From positions 62,868,001-62,932,000 of the forward strand of contig NC_079172.1 in the NCBI RefSeq assembly GCF_947568905.1: a stretch of DNA of 64,000 nucleotides. The letters are read 5' to 3'. The notes under the pieces are model-generated. The model did not search any database and was not told the DNA's origin. It saw nothing but the letters and a program-made list of their open reading frames with translations. The position numbers were made by a program, and so were the translations under genes. Numbering within the stretch: the stretch's first letter is position 1; each line of letters opens with the position of its first letter. The DNA comes from Ostrea edulis (taxonomy: Eukaryota). Shown here piece by piece: positions 8,201-62,100 of this stretch.

Positions 8201-11200
8201 ATTTAATGCAAAGTCACAAATGAGATATATATATATACATGTATATGAAAAGAAAAATCCTCTGAAATTGACAGGCTAAGTGTATATGTTTAAAACTCAA
8301 CCAAAGTACAAGAATCTTTTGATACTAAAATAAAATCTTCAAATGGAGAAGTTTCCAATTCCTTAACCAGAAAACACAGATTCCTGAACTTGCAACAATG
8401 TTGTCCACATGACCAAATCTATAGTTTAACAAAGATTATATGTAAAAATTTGCAATTTCTTACAACTGAATGTTTGGTTGTTGGGTGTTTTTTTAACACT
8501 CCGGGCTATAGCAATGAGGGTTGTTTATCATGCCAATGCCTGCTGCGACACAGGACCTTTGTTTTTAAGTCATATTATCTGAAGGACCCCAGAGTCTCAC
8601 ACATAAGATAATTATCTTAATATCTGCTGCGACACAGGACCTCTGTTTTTAAGTCATATCTGAAGGACCCCAGTCTCAGACATAAGATAATTATCTTAAT
8701 ATCCACATGATCCATCCCTTAACCAGGGCATCAAATGACGAGAGACTCTGAATCAACATATATTATGTCTTGTTATGAATGATAATTCGTAAGTCTATTG
8801 GGACCCACACACACCCCCTACAAGTTGACCACTCCTACAAAACAAAAGTAAGGATAAACAGGAAAAGAGAGAAAGAAAAAGAATAAATGATATCATAATC
8901 TACATATTAATAATCTTCACAGGCATGTTATTATTATCAACAAAATCACAGCCCCAAACCACACACACATAAAAAACCCGATGATCTGATAACCTTAGAT
9001 AAACTAAGTAAGTCTGGTGTTTAGACATGATGCTAGCAGATGTACAGGTATAGTCTTATATACCCACTGTAAAAGTACAGACAGGTAGACTACATTTGTA
9101 TACTAGACTAGATTTAATATATACCCAATTTAAATGTTTGTGTGTAAATAGGTAGACTAATATATTCAATATAAACGTACGTGTGTAGATTCTACGATAA
9201 CAAAGTCGATGCCAGATTATGTTTTATGCAGTGGCATTTGATATTTCCATGAATGCCGTAAAACTGCTAGATCAAGATATACTCACCCCCACCACACCAC
9301 CCCACGCCACGCTAACCCATCCCGGCCCCCTCTCGTTTTACACAGATATTTATTATGATGTTCATACATTTATTTCTTTGGTTTTTTTTACGTATATAAC
9401 AATGCCTGTACTTGCAACATCAAGACATGCCTATTAAATCTTGTGAGGTGTGTGTGTGCCCCCCCCCCCCCCCCCCCCCCCCCCTTGGTTTTTTTGGTAA
9501 AGATACATACTGCAGCTGTCAGAAGCCATGTTTATAACGAGCTGTCTTGACATGTGTGAACATTAACGAAGATGAAAATTAATTTGAATATCAAAGAGTA
9601 GTGGACCTTGATGTCTGTCCTCTGTAAAATCTTAAATTTGATAGCCGCACTGTTACAACATTTGTTAACATGACTAACAGATTACAAGATGTAACCTTTC
9701 ATCATGTTTATCACCATTTACAGTATTATCTTTATCGAGATTGGAGAGACATTACAGCTTATTTCTGTGATGTGCCTCTGTGTCCGTTGTGAACGAGATG
9801 TTAACAATTGTCATTTGCTCTAAAATTGTAAAAAAAAAAAATAACATGAGATTTCCTGTGGTGGTGATGTGAATTGTGTTTATTTTAAGACTGACAATCA
9901 GAGAGGAGGAACAGGAGATCTATGTGGAGCGGATCCTCGGGGAGCGTGACTCGTACCTGAAGGAAATCAGACAGTTGAAATCTCAGGATGATTTTTACCT
10001 TCCTCAAATCAAAGAGGTAAAAATTCATCAGATTGAATTTTAACTTGTGGTCACAAAGAGGTAAAAATTCATCAGATTGAATTTTAACTTGTGGTCACAA
10101 AGAGGTAAAAATTCATCAGATTGAATTTTAACTTGTGGTCACAAAGAGGTAAAAATTCATTAGAAATCCAATTAAGTTTTAACATGTCACAAAGAGGTAA
10201 AAATTTATCAGAAATATAAACAAGTTTTAAGGAGGAATAACACACATGTAGTCTAGAGAAATTTAATATGAATGAAAAGTGGAGGATATACATGTACAAT
10301 AATATTTTAAAATTGAAAAACTTTCAAATTTACTTTATTAAAAAATCTAGTTTTAGTAATAAAAAAAAAATGCAGTTTTAGTAGAAAGTAATCAAATTTC
10401 AACTCCTGGAATCGAACCCTGGACATACAGATCAGCAGTTGACACGTTAACCGACTGAGCTGCCCAGTTAGGCAATTAGATTTGAATGGAATATATATAC
10501 AAATATTGCTGATATTCATATTTTCATGATTTAAAAGAAAGTCAGCCATTATGATGATGTAGTATATACCTCCTTAATATGTTGACACAAAAGGTTTTGG
10601 TACTTTCAAGTAACACATGCAAATTATTAATTTAGGTCAGGTAGAGGGTTTTAATGTTAATTTTACTATGAACTTTGAGTAGGGTTGTTCTGAAACAAAA
10701 TTTTACTCAAAACATCAATGGGCAGTGTGGTTAGATCCAGTGCTAAACTTGTTCTCTATTGAGTCTCCGATCAGAATTTGTAGCAAGAAGGTATCTTTAA
10801 TGTTTTGATTGTTTTTTCTTCAGAAGTCCGTGAATGACCTTGACTTTGGAAATTTTACTTACTTTGTCTATATTTATTGCTAGCTTGAGTACACTATTGC
10901 CCAGCAGAACAATGATGTGAGGACGCTGAAAGACAAACTCGCCAGTCATGATGCTGCTGCCAAGAGGACAGTAGCTGCTCTGCAGAACGAACTAAAAGTT
11001 CGGGTGGATCAGGTAGACAGTGTAAAGGAGGCCATGCCTCGGTGTGCTTCTTGTATAGGAGGCCATGTCTCAGTGTGGTGTCCCTGTAGTAGGCCATGCC
11101 TCAGTGTGGTGTCCCTGTAGTAGGCCATGCCTCAGTGTGGTGTCCCTGTAGTAGGCCATGCCTCAGTGTGGTGTCCCTGTAGTAGGCCATGCCTCAGTGT

Positions 11201-39140: not shown

Positions 39141-40277
39141 TTAATGCAGATTAATGACAGAGTTCAATAATTTCGTCAGTGATCTTCGTATACCGTTATA
39201 ATTCAATGACAATTCGCGCAGACTCTGATTAATGTCCTGTAGCAGTTGAAAACACTTTCTTGGAAAGGCATCAGGGGAGAGGAGATGCCTGAAGAATAAT
39301 TCGCTCGCCCGCTCCAAGTTGCGTTTGGCGTTGTGACCTTGACATAACCCCATCTCACAGCTGATCCCGTATCTGCAGGGATGTCGCCGCGTGTTGCTCT
39401 CCACGGAGTACGCGTCACACGATGGTTCTAAGTTGTCTACGTCATCTAAATCAATCATCTTTATAGTAGAATTCACCATCAGAAAATGGTCTATTTTGAA
39501 GTCTCTTATCCTCAATGACCCTAGCGGTGAATTTGCCAAATACTGAAAAAATGAAATCAGATGCAGAGATTGGAGAATTTTATCCCGCACGGGGAGGTCT
39601 GTTAATTTTGCTACAGAGATACTCGTTCCTTTTTCATACACTGCGACCACACCGTGTTCTGTCAGGTCCGTGCTGTCCGACTCCTCGCTCCGTACACAGT
39701 ATCCCAGTAATCTCAGAAATCCTTCATGTTGTAGTTGTTGAAGTAATAGAATTTCTTTCATTAATTTCATTGTTGGAAATATAAAGCACCTTGACCGTTT
39801 AAACCCGTCTGATCGAGCACTACCCGACAACCCATCCAAACACTCCCGAGCCTCTTTCTGGTGACGTGTCACCATTTTAACTACCACATTCTCTCCTCTG
39901 TAAAACCCGAGAAACGCCTGCTTTGTGACACCGTGTCCTATTTTCTCACGGAGTTCAATCTGATTGATATTTTCGCACGTGAAAAGTGCATTCTTGTATA
40001 GACATTTCGTTTTATATCCCTCACAAGGGTTCACAGAATCACTGTCATTTCTACGTTGATATCGTAACGTTTTTTCACGAAAACTTGTGTCAACCGGTTT
40101 AGTCTTTCGGAAATAAGAAATAGTCGTTTTGGAGGCGAGAGCTGTGTGTGTTATCTCTTTGTGAACAGCGTCCTCCTCCGACACATTGGCCATGAGCTCG
40201 AACACTACGGAAAAGTACAAGTAGAGAACGAGCGGCAGAAATAGCATCGTACATCGCACGAGTCCTCGCCGTGTCAT
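39141..40277 (-). CDS. Extracellular tyrosine-protein kinase PKDCC/VLK-like, intronless, 378 aa
   Basis: N-terminal hydrophobic signal anchor, G-loop IGHGVTKQAF, VVVK, KLMKEILLLQQLQH..LLGYC, LGSLRIRDFK catalytic loop, KMIDLDD, Cys-rich C-lobe. Matches the recalled PKDCC pattern; ortholog versus paralog unresolved. Confidence 0.82.
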   Translation of the reverse strand: MTRRGLVRCTMLFLPLVLYLYFSVVFELMANVSEEDAVHKEITHTALASKTTISYFRKTKPVDTSFREKTLRYQRRNDSDSVNPCEGYKTKCLYKNALFTCENINQIELREKIGHGVTKQAFLGFYRGENVVVKMVTRHQKEARECLDGLSGSARSDGFKRSRCFIFPTMKLMKEILLLQQLQHEGFLRLLGYCVRSEESDSTDLTEHGVVAVYEKGTSISVAKLTDLPVRDKILQSLHLISFFQYLANSPLGSLRIRDFKIDHFLMVNSTIKMIDLDDVDNLEPSCDAYSVESNTRRHPCRYGISCEMGLCQGHNAKRNLERASELFFRHLLSPDAFPRKCFQLLQDINQSLRELSLNYNGIRRSLTKLLNSVINLH

Positions 40278-41464
40278 CGTAACTGCATAACTAGTAACTC
40301 GTTTTGAATCTGGCTTTTAATGCACATCAATCTTACTTACTTCATAAATCAATTTGCATCGCTGTTTCTTTTCCGATAGTATCCTCTTCAGACATTGTTA
40401 TGGGGTTTTTCTTGCGAAATCCAACTCCAGTGGGAAGATATTATTTAATAAGAATATGTTGTCCAAAAAGAAACACACTGAGATAAATTTTTTTGTAATT
40501 TCCAAATTCTCACATTGTTTAATAACTGTGTCTCAATATAAATACAGGAATGCGATGCTTTATCAAGTTCTCCAAACGCAATCGCCAGGATCCCCCGTGT
40601 GACAAACGCCGGCCATTTGTCTGACTGTGGATATCAATGTTTCATTGCAAGCCTTGATTAACTTGAAGAAGGAAAGTCGCGGACTGAACTTAATATAATT
40701 ATAAGCCCCTCACTCACGATGGCGCTAACGGATCGGTGTCGAGGTGTCCACGGAAATAAGGAAATCGATCTGCAATTACATTTAGTAGCATTTTTCCTTT
40801 TACCAAAAAACAATTTAATAAAGTCTATCGTATTTATAGATAATTATTATTGCCAATGCTCACGAGATTACCGTGACTTTTGAGGCAATGAAGAGCGACA
40901 GGTCTTATGTCATTTTGGCTTTTAGAGGTGTATCATAATTATATAATTTTGTCAAGTGCTTAGTAAAATTTTCAAAATTGAATCATCTGTCAGAAATTTT
41001 AGTTCATGGGACGACATGATGGCGTCAAGAGACTTAAAGAAATGTCTCAAGCCATTGTTTTTCTTTATTCATGAAAGCCTTTCCTTATTTTCCATTAGGA
41101 AATTTTGAAATACACTGCATATTTTACAATGTATTTTCAGAAATTCTTATCCATTGCTAAGTTAAGCGATAAGTAGTTTGATTCATTAAGTCATAATCAC
41201 ATATTTAATGCCGTCTGCATTAAACTTTACTATTAATTTCCATGATGATCTCAATAAAAGCTCCAAAGATTTGAGAAATCCTCCAAATTTACAAGATAAA
41301 TGGTAATAAGGCTTGTCTCGCCGATGTCGCACATCGTGTTTCCGTGTCCACCAGCCCTCTCTGGTGAGGGAGAGAATCGATCAGGAACACCCATGGGCTT
41401 CCGATGGTGTGCTAATGTGTTTTATTGAATTCACCTGTATGCAGAAATAAATGACAATGATTAA

Positions 41465-45048: not shown

Positions 45049-45102
45049 TTAAGAATTCTATCATAAGACTATGATTGCTATGTAACATCACATTGTCAAA
45101 TT

Positions 45103-46237: not shown

Positions 46238-49200
46238 TCACGTTTGTATAGGCAGCCTGGGTGTGGCTATCAAGTCATCGTTGAAGGACAGCTCTTGAGT
46301 CCACTCATAAAGCTTGCTGGCTTCTCTCTCCCACTCCTCTGGATCCTCCCCATCGTCTCCTGTGATCCCATACTTATCGAAATAGTCATCGGGTTCCTCC
46401 GACACTGCCGTGGGCTCCCGTGAATCCAGCAGTTTGCTTCCCTCCTACCAAACAGAGAAGTACAAAAACTGAAAATATCATTTGTATCAAGAACGTTTTG
46501 TGGTTCAATGTTGCGAAGAAAAATATCATAATTTAGGACGCATAACACAATGAAGTAAATCATATTATTAAAAATTGGAAAATGTTCACAACTATATAAA
46601 GATACATTACATAATATTGTAGGTATTTTTTTTTTTTATAGGTATCTAGTATTAGATTACATATATTGCAGGTAATTTTTATAGGTAGCTAGTATTAATA
46701 CATTACATATACTGTAGGCAATTTTTATAGGTATAGCTAGTATTAAATACATTACATATACTGTAGGTAATTTTTATAGGTATAGCTAGTATTAAATACA
46801 TTACATATACTGTAGGTAATTTTTATAGGTATAGCTAGTATTAAATACATTACATATACTGTAGGTAATTTTTATAGGTATAGCTAGTATTAAATACATT
46901 ACATATACTGTAGGTAATTTTTATAGGTATAGCTAGTATTAAATACATTACATAATTATATTGTTGGTCCTTTTTATATATATATATATCTAGTATTTAG
47001 ATACATACTGTAAATTACATAATTATATTGCAGGTACTTTTTATAGGTATAGCTAGTATTTAATACATTATACATATTCATTGTAGGTACTTTTTTTCAT
47101 AGGTAACTAAGTATGTAATGTATTTAATACTAGATATACCTATAAAATGTACCTACAGTATGTGTAATATATTAAACTACCTATAAAAAAGTACCTATAA
47201 TATGAAAGTTGTAGAAAACGATATCATAGTTGAAATGTTCACTTTCTTACATTATATGTATAAAAATTATCAACATTTAAAATATCATAATTGTGAACTT
47301 GTAATCTTTATATATGTGAATGTATGATCTTTCAATTTCGTTTTTAATGACTTTGTAAACTTCATTGTTCTTCTTTAATTACAATCTACCTGTGCTTTAC
47401 TCTCAGAGAATACTACTGAGGAATGGCTGTAAAATTGACCATTTTCCCGTGGATTTCAATTTTTCTGTAGAATGAATTCACCAAAAAATTCAAAATGAAC
47501 TAAAATAACCAATAAGAAATTCTCAACCAATGATGAAATCCCCACACATGGTGTTTTTTTTCTCTCAAACGACAAAAATTTGACCTCGTGAAAATAATTA
47601 ATTTTACAGTAACAAATGTAGCATGTATAATGTTCACTAAAATACGAGTTCTATTTAAATCATTATTATACTAGAAAATACTTCTCTAGTATAATCCAAT
47701 ACCACGTGAAATAAATGAAACAATGAAAGTCACGTATAGAATGATCATACACTACTGAAGCAGAAACTGTACACTCAACGATACAATCATAAACAGAATC
47801 CATGCAGTATCTAAATTTATTATATACCCCCAATAAGCTGTGTTTTTATACTTTTTAATTCACAGAATGTGATCCAGATTTCCACACTGTGGTGATCTGA
47901 ATCCAGATCATGTCTCTCTGAAAGTGATGATGTCACATATATGAACGTGCTTTTGTGGAAAATTATCGACTGCATCGCAAACAAGTCTGCACACACAAAA
48001 AATAATTTTGCCGTATGTTTGTCTTTTTGATAACTAGGGATACATTCATTGTCTGCCTATAAAACTTGTATTTAAAAATATATAGAGGGTTATATAATAA
48101 ATTTGTCATTTCTACAGTGTTATCCGAAGAGTTGGATCATGTTAAGTTGACAGGCACTGGGGCTAAGTGTCGAATTTGATCTGATGATCCGCACCTATTT
48201 AATGTGATCCAACTCTTTGGATCAGGTTACTGTAGTAAAAATATATATACATCTACAAATACATAAAATGAACTAGGAAGATAAAAGTTCTAAGACAGAG
48301 TCAGGTTCTCATGAAATGTTCATCCCTTATTTCTTAAATATATTATGTACTCAGAATGAATACATTTTGTAAATTCAATGGTTCTCTAATAGTCTACATG
48401 TAAATTTCATGAAGGAAAGAGTGGACATGCTGCAGGTGTTCTGGCAGAGAAGTTGAATTTGTCTCAGCCAATCAAAAGCCGTGAAATCAGATCACTCCAA
48501 AAAGTAAGATACAATGTAATTTGAGTAAATATGGTCTATGTGAATGCAACTTTGATCAATAAATAAATTTCATGTTTTAGTCTCATAACTTTTACCATCC
48601 CTTGTATAGACTAAAATGTTGATATAACTATAGTACAACTTTACACAGATGAGAAAGTCGATATAACTCTAGTACATCTAATTACACAGAGGAGAAAGTC
48701 GATATAACTTTAGTACATCCTTACCGAGTTGGAGGAGGAGGCATTCTAGAAGTATTACATTCACATTTTGATAATCATTGACGGCATGTTTAAACAGCAG
48801 ATTAATTTACATCACAGGTAGATAGGAAGCAGTCTCTGCTATGTATTGATAAAACAGCCCACTCACCCTATCTAACCCATACATCTTCCGCAATTTGGAG
48901 GCCCTTGCCTTGGCCTGCCGGGAGCGTCGACTGGAGACAGGCTGACTGACAAACCCGGACATCTTGGACTTGGGCGTGGTTAAAGGGGCTCCCATGGGTA
49001 TAGACTCGGACCTGTCAAAATGAAATTCACGTATCTTATACAATCATGCATAACCCTTATCAAAAAGGAAACATTGGTTATGTGTACAGAAATGTTTAAC
49101 AATGAAATGAATATTGATTACATTTACATGATTTACAGAAATGTTTTATGAGGAAGTGAATAATCCTTTTGCTTTCCTTTGCCTAATTAGCTGCCATAAA

Positions 49201-52200
49201 TTTCACAATAAAGAAATCTGAGATTTTGTGTACGTTTGATTGAGAACCTGGACATCATATCACACTGCCATTGAAGTCTTAAAACCTGCCTGAGGATGAA
49301 GATGAATACTGTAGTCTGAGGGTGAAGATGTGAGGGTGAAGATGTGAGGGTGAAGATGTGAGGGAGAAGATGTGAGGGTGAAGATGTGAGGGTGAAGATG
49401 TGAGGGTGAAGATGTGGGGGTGAAGATGAATACTAATCATGTGACTAAGGGTGGAGATGAATATTGATTACACTGAGGGTGAAGATGAATACTAATTACG
49501 TGCCCGAGGGTGAAGATGAATACTAATTACGTGCCTGAGGGTGAAGATGAATACTGATTACATGTCTGAGGGTGAAGATGAATACTGATTACATGTCTGA
49601 GGGTGAAGATGAATATTGCTTACATGTTTGAGGGTGGAGATGAATACTGATTACATGTCTGAGGGTGAAAATGAATATTGATTACATGTCTGAGGGTGGA
49701 GATGAATACTGATTACATGTCTGAGGGTGAAGATGAATACTAATTACATGTCTGAGGGTGAAGATGAATACAGTTTACGTACCTGAGAGTAGAAATGGCC
49801 CTGATGTGCTGCACTTTAATTTCCTGTGACACTGGTCTCTGGACTAAGATCGGAATTTCCTGTCGCAGTCTGGGAGTTATTCTCTGGTTGTACAGGTAGT
49901 CAATCACATCATAGAAAATGGTTCGTCTGGACAGAACTGCAAAGAAATTCAGTCATAATATCATAACTTGTAAAAGGTGAAGGTGTTTCTCCAAATGCAA
50001 TAACTATCACGATATCTTTATGTACTGTATGTTTATGATTCCTGCAGAAATAAAGGAACAGTGTTAAAACAAAAGTGAAGCGTTCATAAAACTGAATTTA
50101 CCATCCAGTGTCAGCTTCCTCCAGTAGTTTTCTTTGCCACCCTGTGATGCTGGAGCCTCATCCACATTGGCCAGGTACTGAAACATGGTAGTATACTGTT
50201 AGTTTTAGACACATGGTGAGAGTTTGTCTACATTGGACGATACTAAAACATGATACTTCGGATTGTAGATCACATATCGATACGGGGTCTACATGAGTTC
50301 ATCTGTGAATCCAGTAAAGGGCTGTACTCTGGATACACCTCCTTTACACAGTTTACATTAACACAGTCTTCAGGAGGACCCGCCTCCCCGATTATACCAA
50401 GGGAGATCCGAGGGTCGATTGACCACAAATGAAGAATTCATGTATTTCCTTATTGTATGTTCTCCTCATCCTATATACACCAGCTTGTATCTCAACATCC
50501 AATACAATTTCAAATCTATACACACCTGCATGTAATCCTTTAGGGTCGTAACGTCGATTTCGTCCGTGATTTTATACTGCTGGTTGTACATGGCATCTTG
50601 CAGCATTTGATCATAGAACTTCCTGTTTCCCATATTCCTTAAAGAATCTTCTGAGGCCTGTAAATGTAGACACTTACTGAAATACACTGAATCATACTGA
50701 ACTACTGAAAACCATATACAATATACTAAATTACTGAAAACCATATACAATATACTGAATACCATATACAATATACTGAATACCGTATGCAATATACTGA
50801 ATACCATATACAATACACTAAATTACTGAAAACCATATAATTACAATATACTGAATTATTGAATACCATATACAATACACTAAATTACTGAAAACCATAT
50901 AATTACAATATACTGAATTATTGAATACCATATACAATATACTGAATAAGTTATTTAAAGTATCAGAATAACTAATTACCATTCTGCCAGATTTTATATG
51001 CTAGCATTTGTTTTAGTGTTTTTATTTTGGTTTTTCTCTATTGGAGGAGTAGGAGGGAGCTAATGAAGATTAATTTACCGGGGTGAAGGAGCAGACGAGG
51101 GCTAATGAAGATTAATTTACCAGAGTGAAGTAGCAGGAGAGGTGGCTAATGAAGATTGATTAACCAGAGTGAAGGAGTAGGAGAAAGTTAATGAAGATTA
51201 ATTTACCAGGGTGAAGGAGAAGGAGAGGTGGCTAATGAAGATTGCTTAACCAGAATGAAGGAGTAGGAGGAAGTTAATGAAGATTAATTTACCAGGGTGA
51301 AGGAGCAGGAGGAAGCTAATGAAGATTAATTTACCAGGGTGAAGGAGCAGGAGGAAGTCAATGAAGAGTAATTTAACAGGGTGAAGGAGTAGGAGGAAAT
51401 TAATGCAGATTAATTTACCAGGGTGAAGGAGCAGGAGGAAGTTAATGAAGATTAATTTACCAGAGTGAAGGATTAGGAGGGAGGTAATGAAGATTAATTT
51501 ACCAGAGTGAAGGAGCAGGAGAGGGCTAATGAAGATTAATTTACCAGGGTGAACGAACAGGAGAGGGCTAATGAAGATTAATTTACCAGGGTGAAGTAGT
51601 AAGAGAGGGCTAATGAAGATTAATTTACCAGAGTGAAGGATTAGGAGGGAGGTAATGAAGATTAATTTACCAGGGCGAAGGAGCAGGAGAGGGCTAATGA
51701 AGATTAATTTAGCAGGGTGAAGGAGCAGGAGAGAGCTAATGAAGATTAATTTACCAGGGTGAAGTAGTAAGAGAGGGCTAATGAAGATTGATTTACCAGA
51801 GTGTAGGAGTAGGAGGAAGTTAATGAAGATTAATTTACCAGGATGAAGTAGTAAGAGAGGGCTAATGAAGATTAATTTACCAGGGTGAAGTAGTAAGAGA
51901 GGACTAATGAAGATTAATTTACCAGAGTGAAGGAGCAGGAGAGGGCTAATGAAGATTAATTTACCAGGATGAAGTAGTAAGAGAGGGCTAATGAAGATTA
52001 ATTTACCAGGGTGAAGGAGCAGGAGAGGGCTAATGAAGATTAGTTTACCAGGGTGAAGGATTAGGGGGAGCTTATGACAATGTAGTTCAATATAAGTGAG
52101 TTCAGTATAAGCGGAGTATACTGTATACAGATTGTGTTGGGACTTTTGTTGCCTACCTCAGTGGCTGGTTTTATCACACGTCTCCCGCTCAGATACTTCA

Positions 52201-54856
52201 CACCTTTCCCCTCTGTGTGAATAAAAATCTTGAAGAAAATCATAGGAGGGAATTCCTGACCACCGAACCTATTTAGAAAAAACAGAACCTATTGTTAGTT
52301 TTACACCTCAGCTCCAACTACTGAAAGTTCCACCAGTACAATTACATGTATCTGATGTAAATAAGCACTGTGTTCCTTCATTATATTCTAATCAATAATG
52401 GATCACAGAATGAACACCTGGATCAAAATTATTCTCAGTAGAAAGCATCAAAAAACTATTCATAAATAATTCATTATCATCAGGCTATCAGTTTTATCAT
52501 ACAAACAATTTCTTTTTCCTAAGTACCATAGAATCACTTAAATTTTTGTGGTGATCAGTTTTCGTGAATTGTCAACATTAACATCTGTACATTGAAACAA
52601 CATCTGAATAAGATGAATTGCATATTTCATTGTGGTATAAATTCATGGGAAATGGGTACCTACGAAATCCACATACTTTGAGCCCCTACAAAATGGAGGA
52701 ATCTGACAGTGAATGTTACCTGAACCGAACTCGGACTGGAGGAATCTGAGAGTGAATGTTACCCAATCTAATTAAAATTAGATGTTGGATCCACTCGCAT
52801 ACTCGCTACACACACATCTAAAAACATCCCATAGAGGGTCACGTCAGAGGTCAAATTCGGTATCACTCTAGACTTATCGGCTTCAACAAACATTCAATGA
52901 TTTTGCCAGCGGTGATTTTATTGGTCAATCGAATTTGACCTCTGACGTGACCCTCTACGGAATGTTGTTAGATGTTTGTGTAGCGAGTATGCAAGCGGAT
53001 CTAACATCTAATTTCAATTAGATTGAATGTTACCTGAACTGGACTCGGACTGGAAGAATCTGACAGTGAATGTTACCTGAACCGGACTCATACTGGAGGA
53101 ATCTGACAGTGAATGTTACCTGAACCGGACTCTGACTTGGTTAACTTTGTCATTGAGGAGCTCGGCTTCTTTTGGACAAACTTTCCTCAAGATTTCTTTC
53201 GACAGAGAATTTTCCTAACAGAAAAAAACATTTCATCAAACAGGTTTTCTGATTTCAGAGCCACAGTGTACGTTAATTTACTGTATGTACAACATATCTC
53301 CATCTCATCCACACATTAGGGGACTCCACCTTGTTTTGTGATTTCCTCATAATTTACAAGTAATCGCCCCTACAAGAAATGTGGTTTTCTTGAGAAAAAC
53401 TGAACATAATCCACACTGAGATTATCAAATAAAACACATTGCCAGAGTAACGCCATGCTGTATAATCAACCATCACTGACATATTCAGATTTCCAGTGCA
53501 TAAGATAAAATTAACATATTCGGATGTGCAGTGTATAAGTTGAATATTGACATATCTGGACTTGTGGTGTATAAGACAGATATTGACATATTCAGACTTG
53601 TGGTGTATAAGACAGATATTGACATATCTGGACTTGTGGTGTATATAAGACAGATATTGACATATCTGGACTTGTGGTGTATAAGACAGATATTAACATG
53701 TCTGGACTTGTGGTGTATAAGACAGATATTAACATGTCTGGACTTGTGGTGTACAAAACAGATATAAACATATCTGGACTTGTGGTGTACATAATTAAGA
53801 CAGATAAAACATATCTGGACTTGTGGTGTGTGGTGTATAAGACAGATATTAACATATCTGGACTTGTGGTGTATAAGACAGATATTGACATATTCAGACT
53901 TGTGGTGTATATAAGACAGATATTGACATATCTGGACTTGTGGTGTATAAGACAGATATTGACATATTCAGACTTGTGGTGTATAAGACAGATATTGACA
54001 TATCTGGACTTGTGGTGTATATATGACAGATAAAACATATCTGGACTTGTGGTGTATAAGACAGATATTGACATATCTGGACTTGTGGTGTATATGACAG
54101 ATATTAATTGACATATCTGGACTTGTGGTGTATAAGACAGATATTAATTGACATATCTGGACTTGTGGTGTATAAGACAGATATTATATTATCTGGACTT
54201 GTGGTGTATAAGACAGATATTATATTATCTGGACTTGTGGTGTATAAGACAGATATTATATTATCTGGACTTGTGATGTGTAAGACAGATATTATATTAT
54301 CTGGACTTGTGATGTATAAGACAGATATTGACATACTTACAGCTGCACACACTGCATGCTTCAGTAAACGAAACATCTGCTTATCTCTGAATGCAATCCA
54401 CTGTCTCTCAATGATAGAAGCCGCAGCTTGCCTGATCAATCTAAAATAAAAATTAGGAGATTAATCATTATAATTACTAATTATAATTCTGTAGAAAACC
54501 ATACATGTAATCATTCTGATTTCATGTCTTGTAACAGTAAGATTTACGTTAATTAGGATTTCTAGTCACTGTATAATATCTTACTCTCTCTCCGATTTCT
54601 GTGGCTGACGAAGACCTTTGTTGGAATTCTGATTTAAATTGGAGCGTGTCCCGGCATGGTAATCCTTGGAACTAACTGGAGTGGTGGTTAAAGCCCTGGT
54701 TCCAAATTCATCGGGTCCCAGGGCGTCGAGTCCTGGACTCTTCGATGGCGTAGCACCTCTTTTACTTGCAGCTGAGGGAATTTTAACATTTATAGACGTC
54801 TTGCTTCCTATACTTTTTGCATCAGGGCTTTTCGTCTCACTTCCTGATTCAGACAT
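46238..54856 (-). CDS. CXorf58: CXorf58-like uncharacterised protein (~430 aa, 437 aa with microexon)
   Basis: Minus-strand exons 54856-54585, 54440-54341, 53214-53120, 52268-52157, 50657-50526, 50177-50102, 49936-49783, 49011-48867, [48745-48725], 46444-46238. GT-AG introns, phases consistent. Motifs AASIIERQW..MFRLLKHAVCAA, RFRFGGQEFPPMIFFKIFIHTEGKGVKYLSG, ITDEIDVTTLKDYMQY, DEAPASQGGKENYWRKL and RRSRQAK match recalled human CXorf58. Confidence 0.82.
46610..47180. repeat. 49-bp AT-rich minisatellite with a terminal inverted copy
   Basis: ATTACATATACTGTAGGTAATTTTTATAGGTATAGCTAGTATTAAATAC. Reverse-complement unit at ~47105-47180. Confidence 0.85.
48113..48236. mobile_element. Small TA-flanked MITE-like inverted repeat
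   Basis: TACAGT..GAAGAGTTGGATCA / TGATCCAACTCTTT..ACTGTA. Confidence 0.5.
48725..48745 (-). CDS. Candidate 21-nt in-frame microexon of CXorf58-like (NASSSNS)
   Basis: TTCTAG acceptor, TCG|GTAAGG donor, phase 0-0. Confidence 0.5.
49310..49790 (-). repeat. 31-bp array seeded at a CXorf58 donor, grading into a 13-bp repeat
   Basis: Native CTCTCAG|GTACGTAA. Copies CCCTCAG|ACATGTAA, and GC-type GCACGTAA in the distal copies. Confidence 0.85.
50690..50950. repeat. AT-rich ~22-bp minisatellite
   Basis: ATACCATATACAATATACTGA core. Confidence 0.85.
51058..52060. repeat. 42-bp minisatellite x~24
   Basis: GCTAATGAAGATTAATTTACCAGGGTGAAGGAGCAGGAGAGG. Confidence 0.95.
52695..53135 (-). repeat. 43-bp array of exon end plus donor (TTCAG|GTAACA) in CXorf58
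   Basis: Donor G at 53119 (native), 53076, 53033, 52762, 52719. Confidence 0.88.
52764..53025. mobile_element. 262-bp MITE with ~95-bp TIRs and a 9-bp TSD (Mutator-like)
   Basis: CAATCTAATT..GAGGTCAAATTCG / CGAATTTGACCTC..AATTAGATTG. TSD AATGTTACC at 52755-63 and 53026-34. Confidence 0.82.
53535..54336. repeat. 36-bp minisatellite x~22 starting at position +5 of a CXorf58 intron
   Basis: GACATATCTGGACTTGTGGTGTATAAGACAGATATT. Explains the spurious ORFs 53531-54449. Confidence 0.95.
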
Positions 54857-55674
54857 CTTTGTAATGTTTGTATGATATTGTTGTCTTGAAACAAACAAAA
54901 AAAAAATAAATCAGAAAATGTAGACACAGAGACAGAATAAAAGTATTCAGAGACAATTTTTTTTGCTATATTATTCTATACAAAATGAATTTCTTGTAAA
55001 CATTGGTAGTTCCATCAACTTTTGTTGTATTAATATAAAATTTCTCCACAGGGTGCAGGTTTGCGTAGAATTTCTTGTAGTTCAGTAATCTGCATGTACA
55101 TCATTTATTCTTGCATTGTATTCTATAGAACGGTATGAGGTGTTTTTTATATTTTTGCAAATCTTACTTTCCATACTTTTTAATGTAATCAAGTAAATGC
55201 AATGTGGGGAAAATTGTTTTGACTTAAAAATTGTATAGTATGAATATACATGTATCTGAATGTTATTAAAATGACCTGGAAAGAAAATTGCAATGATTTA
55301 TTGAAAATATGACATTCTGTATGAAATATTTATAAGATATTTTCAATAACTTAGTATTGAAACTTCCCAGTTGTATGCAATTAGGCTTGAACTTTAGAAA
55401 TGGAGATTTTCTGTGGAATTTATGGTAATAAAAATCTTAAAAACTGTAAAAAATATATTAACAGGGCATCTTATCTATTAATAAAAAAAAAAATGGATTT
55501 TAGAAATTGTGCTGCTATCACATTTCAACAGAAATAAGATGCAATTCAATTGGTGTTAGAAACACTTAACAATAAATCTTTACAGCTTCATTCGTTGTTA
55601 TGGTTAGGGTGAACCATCATACAATTTGAAATGTTTATTATGAAAACATAACCTTTTGTGACAGACAAGCAGTT

Positions 55675-55890
55675 CTCTAATTCTTACTTCCAGAATTAAT
55701 ATGTTGCACTAATGTAAACTATACCTGACATTTCTTACTTCCAGATTTAATATGGTGCACTAATGTAAACTACATGACATTTCTTACTTCCAGATTTAAT
55801 ATGTTATGCACTAATTAATATAAACTGCCTGACAATTCTTACTTCCAGATTTAATATGTTGCACTAATGTAAATTACCTGACATTTCTTT
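55675..55890. repeat. ~52-bp tandem repeat x4
   Basis: GCACTAATGTAAACT..CTGACATTTCTTACTTCCAGATTTAAT. Confidence 0.85.
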
Positions 55891-56272
55891 CCAGTGTTTA
55901 GTAGAACTTTTTTTCCCAATTGCATTTTGGTCTGCAATATTATTTTTGACAGTTGTATTGTATAAGATACTGTCTTTGATCGAACTTCATCAGAATTTTT
56001 TTTGGACACCTCAAAAGTTTTCATCTTTCTTTATTTGAGTATTTACAGTTTGTACAAAAAATAAACTAATTTTTTATCCCTCAGTGATGATGGACAAAGA
56101 ATATTTCAATATTCCTGGATCCACCCCTGAATATGACCTGCTAGCCTCACCCTAAGGTGTTAAGATTTTATATATATCTGTGTACATCCTTATTGGGCAC
56201 AACAGTCACTTGCAATCATAAGAAATTGTTTGGGATGTTTTCAGGTGTTTTATTGCTTAATATATCTAACAA

Positions 56273-57119
56273 AGAACAGGCATCAGATGGAAGTTTATCA
56301 ACCAGCTAGAAGACCTTGATTACGCTGATGATAGTGCCCTCTTATCTAGTAAGCACCAACACATGCAGGAAAAGACCGAAAGACTATGTACACATGCTGA
56401 AAGTATTGGTCTCTGGATCAACACGAACAAGACCAAGGTGTTGAGAATTAACAACAAGGAAACCAATCCTATCACAATCAAGGGAAGAAACGTTGAGGAT
56501 GTGGACACTTTCACATACCTTGGTGCTATTGTCAACAAGACAGGAGGGACAACAGAAGACATCAAGCACAGACTGAGTTTAGCCAGGAATGCATTTGCAA
56601 TGCTTAATCCTCTTTGGAAGTCCACCAAATACAGCAGAGCAGCAAAGATCAGAGTAATTAACAGCAATGTGATGTCTGTGCTACTCTATGGAGCAGAAAT
56701 GTGGAAACTAAATGAAAGTGATATCACCAGATTGGAAACTTTTCAGAGAAAATGTCTACGAAGGGAACTCCGCATCTTCTGGCCCATGAAAGTCAGTAAC
56801 GATGAACTATACTGTAGAACAAGGACATGCCCAGTAGGTGAAGTTGTTAAATGCCGAAGATGGAGATGGATAGGACATACTCTGAGGAAACCACATGACA
56901 ACAACTCCAGAGTAGCCCTGACATGGGTCCCAGAAGGTAAAAGAAAGAGAGGTCGCCCAAAAATAACATGGCGAAGAAGTGCAGAGGGAGAACGCGAACA
57001 ACTAGGATGGCAAACTTGGAGCGAAGCAGTTACAGTAGCAAATGACAGAGTGAGATGGCGGAAGATACTGTCAAGCCTTTAATGGGCCGACCATGGCTCA
57101 AAGAGGATAGGTAGGTAGG
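56273..57119 (+). mobile_element. 5'-truncated RTE-clade non-LTR retrotransposon
   Basis: Open frame 56273-57082 with LEDLDYADD, IGLWINTNKTK, FTYLG, LLYGAEMW, RRWRWIGH and GKRKRGRPK..W. (TAGG)n tail. 12-bp TSD TATATCTAACAA at 56261-72 and 57120-31. Confidence 0.9.
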
Positions 57120-57809
57120 TATATCTAACAATTGTAAAATGAAATATATGACTTAAAATAATTAAATCAAAATAGGTCAGCTTTTCAATTTCAACAGGAA
57201 ATAATAAATTCCATCTTTTAGTCTCAAGTCTTTGACATGATAAAGATTACAAGACATACCAAATTTAAAGGGGCATTAGCTGTAGTCATTTTGTCACCAA
57301 AAATTAAATTCAATGAAAATTGTTAGAACTATATTTTATATTTCAGTAATAACACCAGTAACTGTATTTAGTTATTTCAAATACTTTTTAACCTCAAAAC
57401 AGGCACATGAATGCACAGGGTTTTGACACAATCGATGCAAACTGGTATATACAGTATATTTCTATATATATATACCAGTTTGCTTAGATTGTGTCAAAAC
57501 CCTGTGCATGAAATTCAATGTGTAATTCTGCATGGTGATTAAATAATCATTGTCTTGCAAGACAATAATTCTTCTTTATATATTTCTTTACATTGGAAGC
57601 AGTTATCCAATGTAGTTTTATTGGGTTTCTCTTCTTTTTGTACAGAATAAATGTTTTTCTTAGTCATTAATATATATTCCTATGGCATTGAGAGATTTTG
57701 AAAAAAAAAGGTAAATGAATTCAATTTTATGGAGCACTAAATTAACACATACTCAAATAATTGAAGATATCATCAATTCAATTATTGTGTGTGATATATG
57801 TTGACTTAC

Positions 57810-57836
57810 GATTTGAGCGGGAGTTAGGCCTTTCAT
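57810..57836 (-). other. Candidate 27-nt 5' UTR exon of CXorf58-like beginning with an upstream ATG
   Basis: Long pyrimidine tract + TTCAG acceptor, ATC|GTAAGT donor. The first coding exon opens with an acceptor at 54884, so upstream exon(s) must exist. Confidence 0.55.
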
Positions 57837-58893
57837 CTGAAGAAGAGGTATCAAGGTAAAGGTATGAAACAAAATGATGTAAACAAACGATGAATTTCTG
57901 CAAATGTCTCGTCAAGCTAATATAATTCTACTTATGTCTAAATTTCATCCAAAGCCCTCCTTTAAGGCTGCCTATGGCCGTAAAGGCTTGAGTTGGTAAA
58001 ATAAATGGCAGAATATGACAATTAAAACTGATGGCAATTCAGAATTGTAACCAGGATTTCGATGAAAGACATAAATGGAACTACATTAGCCTGACAAGGT
58101 ATTTGCAGACATTCCTTCAGTAAATTTGTATATACCCTGTGAATTGGTCTCAAAGTGGGTAGCCCCCTGTTTGTTTACATTAATATTTTGTTGCGCACCA
58201 TTACATATATATTAGTAGCGAGCAAAGCTCATGTCGCAATGAGTTTGCTCCAATGATTACACATGAGTCACATGATTTGCTCTTCATCAGCTGAAAAAAG
58301 ATAAGTATTAATCCCCATAATGCTTCTGGAAAAATGTTACCATCATTGCAGTATACATCATTGACAACCCCATTAATAAAATAAATAAAATGTTTAAAAA
58401 GTACAAAACGTTTTTAAATTCCAGACAAGCTTTCTCATAGCTTTGTACGTTTTGTTTTTGTTGATAATTGCTTGGTTTGAAATAGAAAACAAAACAAAAA
58501 AACATAGCAGCGACAGTAATATATATGATATCACAATGCAACTGTTTCCATCCACGGCACTACATTTCTTGCATTAAATGAAGAGGCAGATTAAATGTCT
58601 GCAAGTCATTTTGAAAGACGTTAATCAGGGCTTCGCTTGTCTCAACAGTCACACCATACAACATATTATCTCACTTTATAAACGCTATCCAAACTTCAAG
58701 TGTCTGTGGTATGTACGTAAGTTCGACTCTCTCACAATTCCTTATGTAAAAGTATTACTGATTGACAAAAGGAAAATACTAAATATATCACAAAAAAGGG
58801 GTGGAAAGCGTGTGTGTTATACACAAATGCTATTCTTTATCAATGCCCCAGTTCTATAAAGTTGTACTGAGGAAATTCGGCTTTAATACTTAC

Positions 58894-59147
58894 CACTACA
58901 AAATACGATTCTTTGTGATTTCTTACACCAAATCTAAAATTAAACTTCCACTTCACATCATCATTAGCTACACTGATCAGTTATCAAAATGTTGATCTAT
59001 TAACGTCGTAAATAAGCAAAATTGTACGTCTCTATCACAAACATTTGGAGATAGCTTCCGTAGAAACCCATCCCACAATGCAACAGATTTACGCTGTGCG
59101 CATGCGTAGATGCGGAATTCCATACGGTGAATGTTTTGATGTGAAAA
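58894..59147. promoter_or_regulatory. Putative bidirectional promoter between CXorf58-like and IFT80
   Basis: Minus-strand donor TG|GTAAGT at 58893. X-box-like 59054-67 (2 mismatches), Staf/ZNF143-like TCCCACAATGCA 59071-82, NRF1-like TGCGCATGCGTA 59097-108. Confidence 0.5.
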
Positions 59148-62100
59148 ATGAGATTGAAAACTTCATTACAGAAGGAGGCTAAACATATCCTTTATGAGCA
59201 TTGGTACAAATGAAGAATAATAAGGAAGTTAATGGAGGTTTCTGTCACACAAAGAATCAGGACAGCACTCTGTAGTTATTATCAGATTATGTTGTCGATC
59301 GCACTTTTATTAAAAACTGGGCTACTATTTAATATTTCAGTATTTGTAATGCAGTCGGTCGTTTGTGATCTGATGATGAAGGGGCCCTTATTCGGAAATT
59401 ATCGATTCTATTCTCTGTATTTGTTACAAAGTATTCCTGTACAGAGTCTACTTTCATCAATTCATGCAATTATCCCCACTGATTTGGTTTGTATATATTT
59501 TCATGATTTTGTTATTGCAGTTTTGTATTTATTATTGAGACAAATTCCTTAACTCAGAACACATTCAGAACTGGTTAGCTGTGTCGGCTGGACCACACCA
59601 GAAGAATGTTACTCCGGAGCAGACGACCATCTGGTCCTTAAGTGGAATCTGAATTCTAATGAGACAACTACACTAGTCAAACTACCAGATGATGTGTTCC
59701 CCACAGACATGCACTGGTTTCCCAAATCTGCTGTCGGGGGCGGGGCAGGAAAAAAGGGATCAGACCTCTTTGTTCTCACATCAACAGATGGTACAGTCCA
59801 TATTTCTGACGCTACGGCTTTGTTTACACAGTCATATATATGCCTTAAATTTTTGTTGCTGAGAAGACCCAAGCTTTCTGTTTAGCCAGTGATTACCAAT
59901 GTATGCCAGACTTTTCAGTAATCTGATTAAAGTTAGACTTGTAATTAGGAATCTCCACTCCTGTACAACATGCTACAATGCAATACAGTTGTAGCATATT
60001 GTAGACGAGATGAATTACACTTCCAATACAATGACTAAGACATACAGGACTATTAAAGTATTAATAGAATAGTACGAGTGTGGGATAGGGAAATTCCACC
60101 GAGGGGACAAGATTCGCAGTCAAGGGCAAGGCTTTGCCTAGACAGCGAATCTTGTTCCAGAGGTGGAATTTTCCAATCCCACGCGAGTAAATAATAAAGG
60201 ATTATTTTTCTCACATTTTACCAACAGTTTAGTGCATAAATTCAAGAGCATCAAGAGAATTCAAAATTATTGAAATCTTGCATTTCAAATTAAATGGAAA
60301 AACAGCCAGAAAGAGCATATCCGAAAATGTTTTACACTAAATGCATGGGTAAACTAAAAAACCCAAGGCTGTCCACCTGAAAGCTATATCAAAATGAAAT
60401 TCTAAAAAAACAATAAAAATATTTTCTTCACTGTGTAACATAAATCATAGAAAATATATGACGTCGCAGCAGTGTGAGACAAAAAAAAAATCTCATATGG
60501 CTGTCTCCCATGGGTAATTCAGTTTCACACTGGTGATAATGTGCGAAATTTTGATATATCATTTTACACAAGGAAGACTTCTTTAGACCATATATATTTT
60601 CCAGTCGGACCTAGTGTGAATTTATTTTTCTTCTGGATTACTACTGTTATTCTCAAACGTCGTTTTTCTTATGATTAAATATCATCTATACGTGCAGGAA
60701 TACTTCTAGAAATATATACCTCATGTTTTATTATTTAATATTTTTCTTGACAGGAAAGTTACATTTGATTAGCAAGTCCGGGAGAGTAGAGAAGAGCATA
60801 GATGCCCACAAGGGGGCAGTTCTGTCTGGTCGCTGGAGCTGGGACGGCTCAGCTCTGGTTACTGGTTAGTATATACAAAACATCCAGGATGAATATTCCA
60901 AACCCCAACAATTTCAAATCAGAAAAACTTTTATTTTGATAGAGAAATTATTCAAATATGATTTATTTAGAGTAATGTATTATGTTAGAATAATGACTAG
61001 TGATGTGTTATATTTTGTGCACACAGTGTTTAAAATTATACAAATTATTTAATAGCTATTTGCTTTATTTTAAACTTTGGATATATCGAAAATAATAGGT
61101 GGTCAGTTGAATTTCAGTTCAGTGAAGTAGACTGATGACATATTTAAATGAATGCATTCAGAATTATTTACTGTAAATTTGGAGATAAGTAGGAATAAAT
61201 GGTTTGATGTGAATCTGAAATGATACTTAATCATTTTTCAATTCATCTGAGTCAAAATTTGCGATCATACAATGGGCCATTGTTTGATGTGTGATTTGTT
61301 TTTTCTTTTCTTGATTAGCGGGTGAAGATGGACAAGTGAAAATCTGGTCCAGGAGTGGAATGTTGAGGTCTACATTGACACAAAACAGTAAGTGGATTTT
61401 GTTTCATTCAATTAATAGAAGAGATAGATTTATACATATGTACATCCTTGTAGTAAACAATGCATACCATTAAGCTGAGGTGTTGTGATGTGATTAAGCT
61501 GAGGTGTTGGGATGTGATTAAGCTGAGGTGTTGTGATGTGATTAAGCTGAGGTGTTGTGATGTGATTAAGCTGAGGTGTTGTGATGTGATTAAGCTGAGG
61601 TGTTGTGATGTGATGAAGCTGAGGTGTTGTGATGTGATGAAGCTGAGGTGTTGTGATGTGATTAAGCTGAGGTGTTGTCATGTAACCCGTTCATTTATTC
61701 TTTGTAGGTAACACAGTGTACGGAGTGGCATGGGGCCCAGATTCAGACCAGGTTTTGTTTACAAATGGCAGACAACTAGTAATCAAATCACTCCAGGCTA
61801 ACGCCAAACCCACCATGGTAAGTTCATTAAATCACTCCAGTCTATAATGCCAAATGGTAAGTTCACTAGCTGGTTAGTATATCAGCACATAGTAATCACA
61901 ATTAGTTGTATTCAATGCCCCCCAAAAATGGATATAAAAGAAAAGTGAAATAAAAAAAAAATATGTACATGTGTATTGAATTTGGTTATCAGACTTTGGA
62001 GTTTGATCAAATTCTTTTCTAGAGGTACGGTTTATTTCCCGTTGATTTTGGTAACAGAATTAAATAATTTTTTTTTCAGTGGAAAGCTCATGATGGTGTG

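What the first reader, a model, noticed from the sequence alone, without database searches (positions are those of the whole stretch)
10009..61865. Recurrent, transcription-polarised tandem amplification of 5' splice sites in three genes on both strands
Seen: at 9 of roughly 33 donors, the last 8-45 nt of the exon plus the GT and the first intron bases form the unit of a tandem array running downstream into the intron. CCDC186 donors: 10017, 14984, 16628, 18690, 23414, 29012. CXorf58 (minus strand): 53119, 49782. IFT80: 61818. Three more arrays start within ~20 nt after a donor (11013, 54340, 48724). I saw no duplicated acceptor. The polarity flips with gene strand. Arrays span a maturation series: 2 copies, 3, 5, ~12, 20, then decayed. 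Inference: minisatellites are born at donors by a transcription- or splicing-coupled process (e.g. pausing, R-loops or repair at the 5' splice site), or only donor-side duplications survive selection because the most proximal donor is still used. Either way this produces arrays of decoy donors and a possible route to new isoforms or introns. I do not know of a description of this at this density, but cannot exclude one.
Basis: partly seen in the sequence, partly recalled or inferred. Interest (0 to 1): 0.85.

Follow-up and report, generated by a model that had tools for sequence, protein, structure and literature searches.

The report
Splice-donor minisatellites in flat-oyster introns
In three neighbouring flat-oyster genes, about a third of the checked introns begin with head-to-tail copies of the exon's last bases plus its splice signal; the repeat type is already known from human F7 and lancelet genes, but here it is far commoner than chance and is also found at the same splice sites in other oyster genera.

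Summary
The window is Ostrea edulis: my CCDC186 model is 100% identical to XP_056005824.1.

- **CCDC186:** homology and annotation fix its 15 constitutive donors. Six (E2, E5, E6, E8, E12, E15) are the first unit of a tandem array running into the intron.
- **Minus-strand gene:** spliced RNA contigs confirm donors 54340, 53119 and 49782, and the exon-proximal copy is the one spliced.
- **IFT80:** donor 61818 carries an old two-copy duplication.

Across 59 introns in five loci, the donor junction recurs downstream in 16 and the acceptor junction upstream in none. Of 41 arrays, 15 touch a donor against 2.2 expected (P<1e-4).

Saccostrea orthologues carry arrays at the same donors with different unit contents. 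Pinctada has 1 of 16 and Potamilus 0 of 17.

The kind is known: human F7, IFI6, CBS, LMNB2 and PDGF minisatellites, and amphioxus "mirages". This scan has already reported it on other DNA of this genome, acceptor arrays included.

Best reading: tolerated junction-spanning tandem duplications. Use of the first donor keeps the extra copies inside the intron. The cause of the excess at donors is unresolved. I found no evidence for a transcription-coupled origin or for a function.

The parts
5298..29429 (+). CCDC186 coding region, 16 constitutive exons plus an alternative 24-nt microexon at 25739-25762
   Evidence: Spliced alignment to P0003. The translation is identical to O. edulis XP_056005824.1. 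Isoform X1 carries the microexon.
10010..10230 (+). Array on the E2 donor (GT at 10017). The unit is 44 nt, with 3.5 copies plus two variant units. The 'intronic' part of the unit is itself a diverged copy of the exon tail.
   Evidence: Similarity of the unit's intronic part to its own exon tail: z=3.4.
14940..15759 (+). Array on the E5 donor (GT at 14984). The unit is 58 nt (44 exon + 14 intron), about 13 copies, with 210-nt higher-order structure.
   Evidence: Exon tail versus array consensus: 38/44.
16618..17466 (+). Array on the E6 donor (GT at 16628). Fresh copies run to 16752 around a G28 run. Decayed copies run to about 17466, filling most of intron 6.
   Evidence: Junction motif copies at 16676, 16733, 17197-17271 and 17454.
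18643..20190 (+). Array on the E8 donor (GT at 18690). The unit is 58 nt (47 exon + 11 intron). There are 19 further copies; 17 carry an intact AAG|GTGAGT junction and the other two matches do not reach it.
23404..23848 (+). Array on the E12 donor (GT at 23414). The unit is 27 nt (10 exon + 17 intron) and in frame. There are 16 further copies; 15 keep the GT and 13 keep AAG|GT.
28973..29108 (+). Array on the E15 donor (GT at 29012). The unit is 44 nt (39 exon + 5 intron), 3 copies.
52732..53137 (-). Array on the donor at 53119 of the minus-strand gene. The unit is 43 nt (13 exon + 30 intron). It is split by a high-copy insert at 52764-53025, and further copies lie at 52763-52732.
   Evidence: The RNA junction 53119->52268 uses the first copy. 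Read depth and loose ends mark the insert.
49317..49787 (-). Array on the donor at 49782 of the minus-strand gene. The unit is 31 nt (5 exon + 26 intron), about 12 copies, all of which have lost the GT. It is followed by a derived 14-nt sub-array at 49317-49428.
   Evidence: RNA junction 49782->49011. DNA run X6 lacks one 14-nt unit.
61785..61867 (+). Diverged two-copy duplication on the IFT80 donor (GT at 61818): 33 exon + 11 intron nt, with two collinear 12-nt exact blocks.
   Evidence: Exon homology to IFT80.
11029..12260 (+). Intronic array of 31 nt x 40 that starts 17 nt after the E3 donor and does not contain the junction.
   Evidence: No similarity to the exon tail.
53479..54335 (-). 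Intronic array of about 36 nt x 21 that starts 5 nt after the donor G at 54340 and does not contain the junction.
   Evidence: No similarity to the exon tail.
48621..48724 (-). Intronic array of 41 nt x 2.6.
46241..54910 (-). Minus-strand gene. Exons seen in RNA contigs: 54440-54341, 53214-53120, 52268-52157, 50657-50526, 50177-50102, 49936-49783, 49011-48867. The next exon starts at 46443.

Best explanation
These are splice-donor-anchored intronic minisatellites. They are the same kind as the human F7 IVS7 VNTR and the amphioxus 'mirages'.

Each began as a short tandem duplication of 27 to about 100 bp that straddled an exon-intron junction. It then grew and turned over by slippage or unequal exchange. 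This origin and growth are inferred from the two-copy cases and from the higher-order repeat structure.

The arrays are tolerated because the spliceosome uses the first, exon-proximal donor, so every later copy is simply intron. This is shown for two arrays by RNA contigs, and for CCDC186 by the annotated proteins and by orthology.

Equivalent duplications inside constrained exons would change the mRNA and be removed. So would duplications across acceptors, where the first AG after the branch point is used. This filter is inferred from splicing rules, and it is not absolute in this genome.

The roughly 7-fold excess at donors over intron interiors needs an extra bias. My preferred reading is that exon-proximal DNA in ostreid oysters duplicates, or keeps duplications, far more often than AT-rich intron interior, and that donor-spanning events are the only tolerated outlet. 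That last step is inferred from very small counts.
For: - **Junctions fixed independently of the repeats**.
- **First donor used** (PMC1557585).
- **Symmetric junction test.** The donor 20-mer recurs in 16 of 59 introns and the acceptor 20-mer in 0 of 59. Controls do not exceed 13/20 except where an array fills a short intron.
- **Permutation.** 15 of 41 arrays touch donors against 2.2 expected.
- **A clean two-copy seed.** S. cucullata E5 has a 47-nt duplication (38 exon + 9 intron) that is absent from S. echinata.
- **Decoy sites look neutral.** The decoy donor core is no more and no less variable than the rest of the unit: 4.3% vs 3.8%, P=0.57.
- **No link to donor strength.** Mean 6.5 vs 6.4 matches to the consensus, P=0.64.
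- **Exon-proximal bias.** In-frame arrays also occur in the tolerant exon 1 of the three ostreid loci, but not in Pinctada or Potamilus.
Against: - A splicing filter on uniform duplications predicts about 2 donor arrays, not 15.
- The exon-bias step rests on about 9 young events.
- Acceptor depletion is not itself significant: 0 against 2.2 expected, P=0.10.
- Other windows of this genome are reported to carry acceptor arrays (I did not check them).
- Arrays recur at the same orthologous donors in Ostrea and Saccostrea: 4 of the 5 Saccostrea donors overlap the 6 Ostrea donors, hypergeometric P about 0.05 by my own arithmetic. That fits either site-specific hot spots or very long persistence.
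- RNA evidence comes from assembled contigs of one study. Such contigs cannot exclude minor use of decoy donors.
Confidence: 0.6

Rival explanations
1. A donor-targeted mutational process. DNA at 5' splice sites is preferentially broken or re-copied during transcription or splicing, for example through polymerase pausing, R-loop processing, or staggered nicks that are filled in. Short tandem duplications would then be born at donors, recurrently and specifically in ostreid oysters.
For: - Roughly 7-fold excess over intron interiors.
- Independent events at the same donor in different lineages. The E5 unit is 44+14 nt in Ostrea and 38+9 nt in S. cucullata, with none in S. echinata. The E8 unit is 58 nt against 90 nt.
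- Ostreids have 15 of 43 donors affected, Pinctada 1 of 16 and Potamilus 0 of 17, although the number of arrays per gene is similar.
- Two further arrays start 5 and 17 nt after donors without containing them.
Against: - No direct evidence for any break or pausing signal.
- Unit edges lie anywhere from 5 to about 100 nt upstream of the junction and 5 to 37 nt downstream, so no fixed breakpoint is seen.
- Acceptor arrays are reported elsewhere in this genome.
- Exon 1 also carries arrays far from any donor.
Confidence: 0.2
2. The decoy donors are selected for a function. They would act as extra U1 snRNP landing sites that strengthen recognition of the upstream exon, suppress premature polyadenylation in AT-rich introns, or tune expression through copy number.
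For: - Most decoys keep an intact GT, for example all 17 E8 copies that contain the junction and 15 of 16 at E12.
- Arrays sit at the same donors in distant oyster genera.
- The F7 authors proposed that consecutive sites stimulate selection of the most upstream site (PMC1557585).
Against: - The donor core in the copies is not better conserved than the rest of the unit.
- All copies at 49782 have lost the GT.
- Arrays are not associated with weak donors.
- Presence varies between two Saccostrea species: E3 and E5 differ.
- Copy number is polymorphic.
Confidence: 0.1
3. The excess is a geometric by-product. Random duplications in introns that were once tiny would often hit a boundary, and the arrays then inflated those introns.
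For: - Proposed by an earlier follow-up in this scan (s1-301758).
- Intron 6 is largely decayed array.
Against: - Arrays cover only 2-56% of their introns, and the remainders are 225-1,090 nt.
- Orthologous introns without arrays are 300-2,400 nt in Saccostrea, Pinctada and Potamilus.
- This geometry would hit acceptors equally.
Confidence: 0.05
4. The pattern is an assembly or annotation artefact.
For: Short-read contigs break inside the arrays.
Against: - Independent assemblies of two Saccostrea species and Pinctada show the same structure.
- DNA runs from two other studies reach into the arrays, one with a one-unit difference.
- The copies are diverged.
- Exon ends are fixed by orthology, RNA and RefSeq protein identity.
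Confidence: 0.02

Closest known systems
Human minisatellites whose first monomer spans an exon-intron boundary: F7 IVS7 37-bp VNTR, IFI6 (6-16) intron 2, CBS IVS13, LMNB2, PDGF intron 4 (PMC1557585)
   Same: - The first unit is the exon tail plus the 5' splice site plus the intron start, so the donor is repeated 4 to about 25 times in the intron.
- The arrays are length-polymorphic.
- Only the most upstream donor is spliced, or in some genes the first two or three.
- All the listed cases are donor-side.
   Different: The human cases are isolated single loci. Here 6 of 15 donors of one gene, and about a third of the checked donors in three neighbouring genes, carry one. The excess over random placement is about 7-fold, and arrays sit at the same orthologous donors in other oyster genera.
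Amphioxus 'mirages' (Adh3, TnC, globins BflGb6 and BflGb9, PGBD5; PMC3087553, PMC3902484)
   Same: [quoted passage not shown]
- They do not disturb normal splicing.
- The units evolve in concert, and the boundary copy is the most diverged.
   Different: In amphioxus both 5' and 3' boundaries are duplicated, and units reach 150-160 bp. In this window and in the CCDC186 orthologues only donors are hit (16 against 0), and units are mostly 27-58 bp. No genome-level density or enrichment is given in the two amphioxus papers I read.
Intron gain by tandem duplication across an AG|GT proto-splice site (the Rogers model, as cited in PMC3087553)
   Same: A tandem duplication containing AG|GT creates additional potential splice sites.
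   Different: No new intron or exon is created here. All array-bearing introns are at positions shared with Pinctada and Potamilus, and the copies stay unspliced.

Membership tests
Splice-junction ('mirage' / F7-type) minisatellite | Head-to-tail tandem array of a 10-160 bp unit | tested here: met
   TRF finds periods of 27-58 nt and 2 to about 26 copies at 73-99% match. Unit-by-unit print-outs agree.
Splice-junction ('mirage' / F7-type) minisatellite | The first unit spans a genuine exon-intron boundary | tested here: met
   Boundaries were set without reference to the repeats. The sources are orthologous protein alignment, identity to the RefSeq protein, spliced RNA contigs and IFT80 homology.
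Splice-junction ('mirage' / F7-type) minisatellite | The splice-site sequence is repeated in the intron copies | tested here: met
   The GT is kept in most copies: all 17 junction-bearing copies at E8, 15 of 16 at E12, and 3 of 3 at 53119. The exception is the 49782 array, where the GT has been lost.
Splice-junction ('mirage' / F7-type) minisatellite | Normal mRNA uses the authentic, most upstream site | tested here: met
   RNA contigs from two runs of one study join 53119 and 49782 to the next exons. CCDC186 isoforms X1 and X2 both use the first donors. Minor use of decoys cannot be excluded from contigs.
Splice-junction ('mirage' / F7-type) minisatellite | Copy-number instability or polymorphism | tested here: inconclusive
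   One DNA run lacks a 14-nt unit at 49366. Short-read contigs do not span the arrays. Copy numbers and units differ between species.
Intron gain by tandem duplication (Rogers model) | The duplication creates a new intron that is absent from relatives | tested here: not met
   Exon lengths and intron positions are conserved in Saccostrea, Pinctada and Potamilus.
Transposon-borne or introner-like repeat | The unit is unrelated to the local exon and dispersed copies occur elsewhere | tested here: not met
   The units are copies of the adjacent exon tail. The only dispersed element seen is the insert at 52764-53025, which splits one array.

The most novel reading that the evidence does not exclude
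Ostreid oysters have a lineage-specific process that makes short tandem duplications preferentially at, or just upstream of, 5' splice sites. It strikes the same orthologous donors repeatedly in different genera. It seeds minisatellites that can fill most of an intron, so it would be a directional driver of intron growth and a standing pool of cryptic donors.
Probability: 0.2. Interest if true: 0.8.

Novelty: new member of a known kind. Interest (0 to 1): 0.45.

Why it matters
As single loci these repeats are textbook material; F7 IVS7 is a classic model for 5' splice-site choice. The new points are scale and pattern.

- In one conserved oyster gene, 40% of donors carry such an array.
- The excess over random placement is about 7-fold.
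- Two other oyster genera carry arrays at the same donors built from differently bounded units, while a pearl oyster and a freshwater mussel almost lack them.

If the bias lies in how the duplications arise, oysters would be a natural system for studying a splice-site-linked or exon-linked duplication mechanism and its contribution to intron growth. If it lies in retention, they offer hundreds of natural experiments on how strictly the spliceosome picks the first donor. Either way, gene predictors and RNA-seq aligners for these genomes face ladders of perfect decoy donors.

Tried and rejected
- **Once-tiny introns.** Rejected for this gene. Arrays cover 2-56% of their introns, and orthologous introns without arrays are 300-2,400 nt.
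- **Compensation for weak donors.** No difference in consensus match.
- **Selection for or against the decoy 5' splice-site core.** No difference in variability. The test is crude, because repeat copies are not independent.
- **Near-donor arrays as decayed junction copies.** The arrays at E3 and at 54335 show no similarity to their exon tails.
- **Donor 48724.** Refuted by RNA contigs.
- **Array at 55681-55889.** Its unit contains CAG|GTAAGT-like sites on the minus strand upstream of the first coding exon. I could not tell whether it marks a 5'-UTR exon donor.
- **Shared ancestry of the Ostrea and Saccostrea arrays at E2 and E6.** Similarity outside the exon-tail and donor part is not significant, so neither common descent nor independent origin is shown. 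E5 and E8 differ in unit content and look independent.
- **Look-ups that failed.**
  - P0037 and P0039 are not on record as gene products.
  - My exact-match splice model failed for Tegillarca L007.
  - Canestro et al. 2002 (PMC117041) is not held.
  - The species of P0003 is unnamed.
- **Literature.** Searches found no paper describing this in oysters or other bivalves.


Full report
**What the window is.** The window is gene-dense invertebrate DNA with no N. Its + strand carries a 16-exon CCDC186 gene. I mapped the exons by tblastn with a full-length orthologue from an RNA assembly (P0003, 1152 aa, Pfam CCDC186_helical). I then refined each junction by enumerating GT/AG pairs that keep the frame and maximise similarity. 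The resulting 1199-residue translation is identical to Ostrea edulis XP_056005824.1, isoform X2. The locus lies on OX387712.1. Isoform X1 differs only by a 24-nt microexon at 25739-25762. So the species is the European flat oyster, and the exon ends rest on orthology and on the RefSeq protein, not on the repeats.

**The observation in CCDC186.** Reading the sequence at each claimed donor shows that the last bases of the exon, the GT and the first intron bases form the first unit of a tandem array that runs into the intron.

| Donor | GT at | Unit | Copies and notes |
|---|---|---|---|
| E2 | 10017 | 44 nt | The 'intronic' part is itself a diverged exon-tail copy (z=3.4) |
| E5 | 14984 | 58 nt | 44 exon nt at 38/44 identity to the array consensus; about 13 copies |
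| E6 | 16628 | about 29 nt | Exact junction copies at 16676 and 16733; decayed copies to 17454, filling most of the intron |
| E8 | 18690 | 58 nt | 19 further copies, 17 with an intact AAG|GTGAGT (the other two matches do not reach the junction) |
| E12 | 23414 | 27 nt, in frame | 16 further copies |
| E15 | 29012 | 44 nt | 3 copies |

That is 6 of 15 constitutive donors. The array at 11029 starts 17 nt after the E3 donor and shows no similarity to the exon tail.

**The minus-strand gene.** One reads call on 48650-54600 laid spliced contigs from two runs of one study on seven exons. These runs were labelled RNA only as a guess. Their contigs, however, carry GT-AG joints on the minus strand and a continuous open reading frame.
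- Donor G positions 54340, 53119 and 49782 are confirmed.
- At 53119 and 49782 the exon-proximal copy is the one joined to the next exon.
- The copies after 49782 have lost the GT.
- The 53119 array is interrupted by a 262-nt very-high-copy insert at 52764-53025 and continues beyond it.
The exon ends at 48867, and the next exon starts at 46443.
- Two DNA runs from other studies hold the stretch. One lacks a single 14-nt unit.
- The name CXorf58 was not tested.

**IFT80.** The exon ending at 61817 aligns to Chlamydomonas IFT80 residues 147-179. It is followed by a diverged two-copy duplication of 33 exon nt plus 11 intron nt.

**Is it more than chance?**
- *Symmetric test, independent of TRF.* I took the 20-mer across each donor (12 exon + 8 intron nt) and looked for its best match within the next 300 nt of intron. 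I did the mirror test for each acceptor upstream. In 59 introns, 16 donors reach 15/20 or better and no acceptor exceeds 13/20. The loci were window CCDC186, the window minus gene, Saccostrea cucullata L004, S. echinata L005 and Pinctada imbricata L006. Swapped controls stay at 13 or below, except in two short introns that an array nearly fills.
- *Permutation.* I placed the 41 arrays of at least 40 nt at random within their gene spans. This gives 2.2 arrays touching a donor, with a maximum of 9 in 10,000 trials, against 15 observed. For acceptors the expectation is also 2.2, against 0 observed (P=0.10).

So the signal is an excess at donors. It is not a significant deficit at acceptors.

**Relatives.** Exact exon models for the orthologous loci, combined with TRF, give the following.

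| Species | Donors with arrays | Acceptors with arrays |
|---|---|---|
| S. cucullata (gene cut at E8 by the contig end) | E2, E5, E6 | none |
| S. echinata | E2, E3, E6, E8 | none |
| Pinctada imbricata | E13 only (1 of 16) | none |
| Potamilus streckersoni | 0 of 17, although it has 10 arrays in the gene | none |

- Unit contents differ at the same donor. E5 is 44+14 nt in Ostrea against a clean two-copy 38+9 nt duplication in S. cucullata, with none in S. echinata. E8 is 58 nt against 90 nt. E6 is about 29 nt against 42 nt. At least some events are therefore independent hits on the same donor.
- Four of the five Saccostrea donors with arrays are among the six Ostrea donors. By my own hypergeometric arithmetic this is P about 0.05.
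- The habit is concentrated in Ostreidae: 15 of 43 checked donors.

**Tests of explanations.**
- *Once-tiny introns.* Arrays cover 2-56% of their introns, and orthologous introns without arrays are 300-2,400 nt. This explanation does not fit.
- *Compensation for weak donors.* There is no difference in match to CAG|GTAAGT: 6.5 against 6.4, P=0.64.
- *Selection on the decoys.* Within arrays, the -3..+6 core varies as much as the rest of the unit: 4.3% against 3.8%, P=0.57. This gives no sign that decoy sites are preserved or purged.
- *Where young events lie.* Events with 3 copies or fewer and a unit of at least 20 nt were tallied by hand. In the ostreid loci, 3 lie at donors, 4 in about 48 kb of intron interior, and 2 in frame in the tolerant, disordered exon 1. 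Per kilobase, donors and frame-corrected exon 1 are similar, and both are roughly 15-20 times the intron interior. These counts are tiny. They suggest that exon-proximal DNA duplicates, or keeps duplications, more readily, and that donor-spanning events are the tolerated outlet. Pinctada and Potamilus lack both exon-1 arrays and donor arrays.

**What is known.**
- Borensztajn et al. 2006 (PMC1557585) list human genes with a minisatellite whose first monomer spans an exon-intron boundary: F7, IFI6, CBS, LMNB2 and PDGF. All the described cases are donor-side. For F7 the authors show that the pseudo-sites are functional but silent, because selection proceeds 5' to 3' and takes the most upstream site.
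- In amphioxus, such boundary duplications are called 'mirages' and are reported in Adh3, TnC, globin and PGBD5 genes. They occur at both 5' and 3' boundaries and do not disturb splicing (PMC3087553, PMC3902484).
- I found no paper describing them in oysters or other bivalves.
- This scan has already reported the same thing on other DNA of this genome. One follow-up found about a quarter of introns affected and a 9-fold excess. Several notes report acceptor arrays elsewhere, one of them followed up (anillin). The donor-only pattern of this window is therefore not absolute genome-wide. I did not check those notes myself.

**Verdict.** The transcription-coupled alternative remains possible and has no direct support. 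The decoys show no sign of making new isoforms or introns here. This is a new, unusually dense and lineage-concentrated instance of a known kind of repeat. What remains open is why donors, and the same donors in different genera, are hit so often.

Noticed in passing
window 52764-53025: A 262-nt insert with very high depth in both DNA and RNA runs (mean word depth up to about 47,000) and many loose ends at both edges. It is probably a MITE-like dispersed repeat. It sits inside the 53119 donor array and splits it.
   Followed up: partly
window 1035-2501; L005:17594-18209: A 166-bp satellite of about 8 copies lies upstream of CCDC186. It is about 80% identical to a 166-bp array in intron 11 of Saccostrea echinata CCDC186. 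The 165-167-bp arrays in the Pinctada introns gave no hit at the threshold used.
   Followed up: partly
window 5458-5709: An in-frame coding minisatellite (57- and 45-nt units) in the disordered N-terminal exon 1 of CCDC186. It encodes repeats like [19 protein letters not shown]. Both Saccostrea orthologues also have short repeats within exon 1.
   Followed up: partly
window 25739-25762: An alternative 24-nt microexon (LDHRKLSQ) that distinguishes CCDC186 isoform X1 from X2. It has no repeat at its splice sites.
   Followed up: yes
window 23404-23848: The E12 ladder has a 27-nt unit and an open frame, so each downstream donor would add nine residues (VCHSVFNIK) without a stop. Nearly all variation between copies falls in the donor core (GTATGT / GTAGGT / GTCGGT). 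No annotated isoform uses these donors.
   Followed up: partly
window 55681-55889 (minus strand): A four-copy array of about 50 nt whose unit contains CAG|GTAAGT-like sites on the minus strand. It lies upstream of the first coding exon of the minus-strand gene and may mark the donor of a 5'-UTR exon. This was not testable after the single reads call.
   Followed up: no
window 30458-31994: A 28-nt x 51 array just downstream of the CCDC186 stop codon, with AATAAA in each unit. Another first-reader note already covers it.
   Followed up: no
window 16644-16671, 3754-3785, 9459-9484: Long homopolymer runs: G28 inside the E6 array, G32 and C26.
   Followed up: no
window 56270-57079 (+) and 39144-40316 (-): A reverse-transcriptase fragment (RVT_1 plus DUF6451), likely a LINE remnant, and a single-exon FAM69/PIP49-type kinase-domain ORF.
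   Followed up: partly
window 61469-61683: A 24-nt x 9 array that ends 24 nt before the acceptor of the IFT80 exon starting at 61708. It does not include the acceptor.
   Followed up: partly
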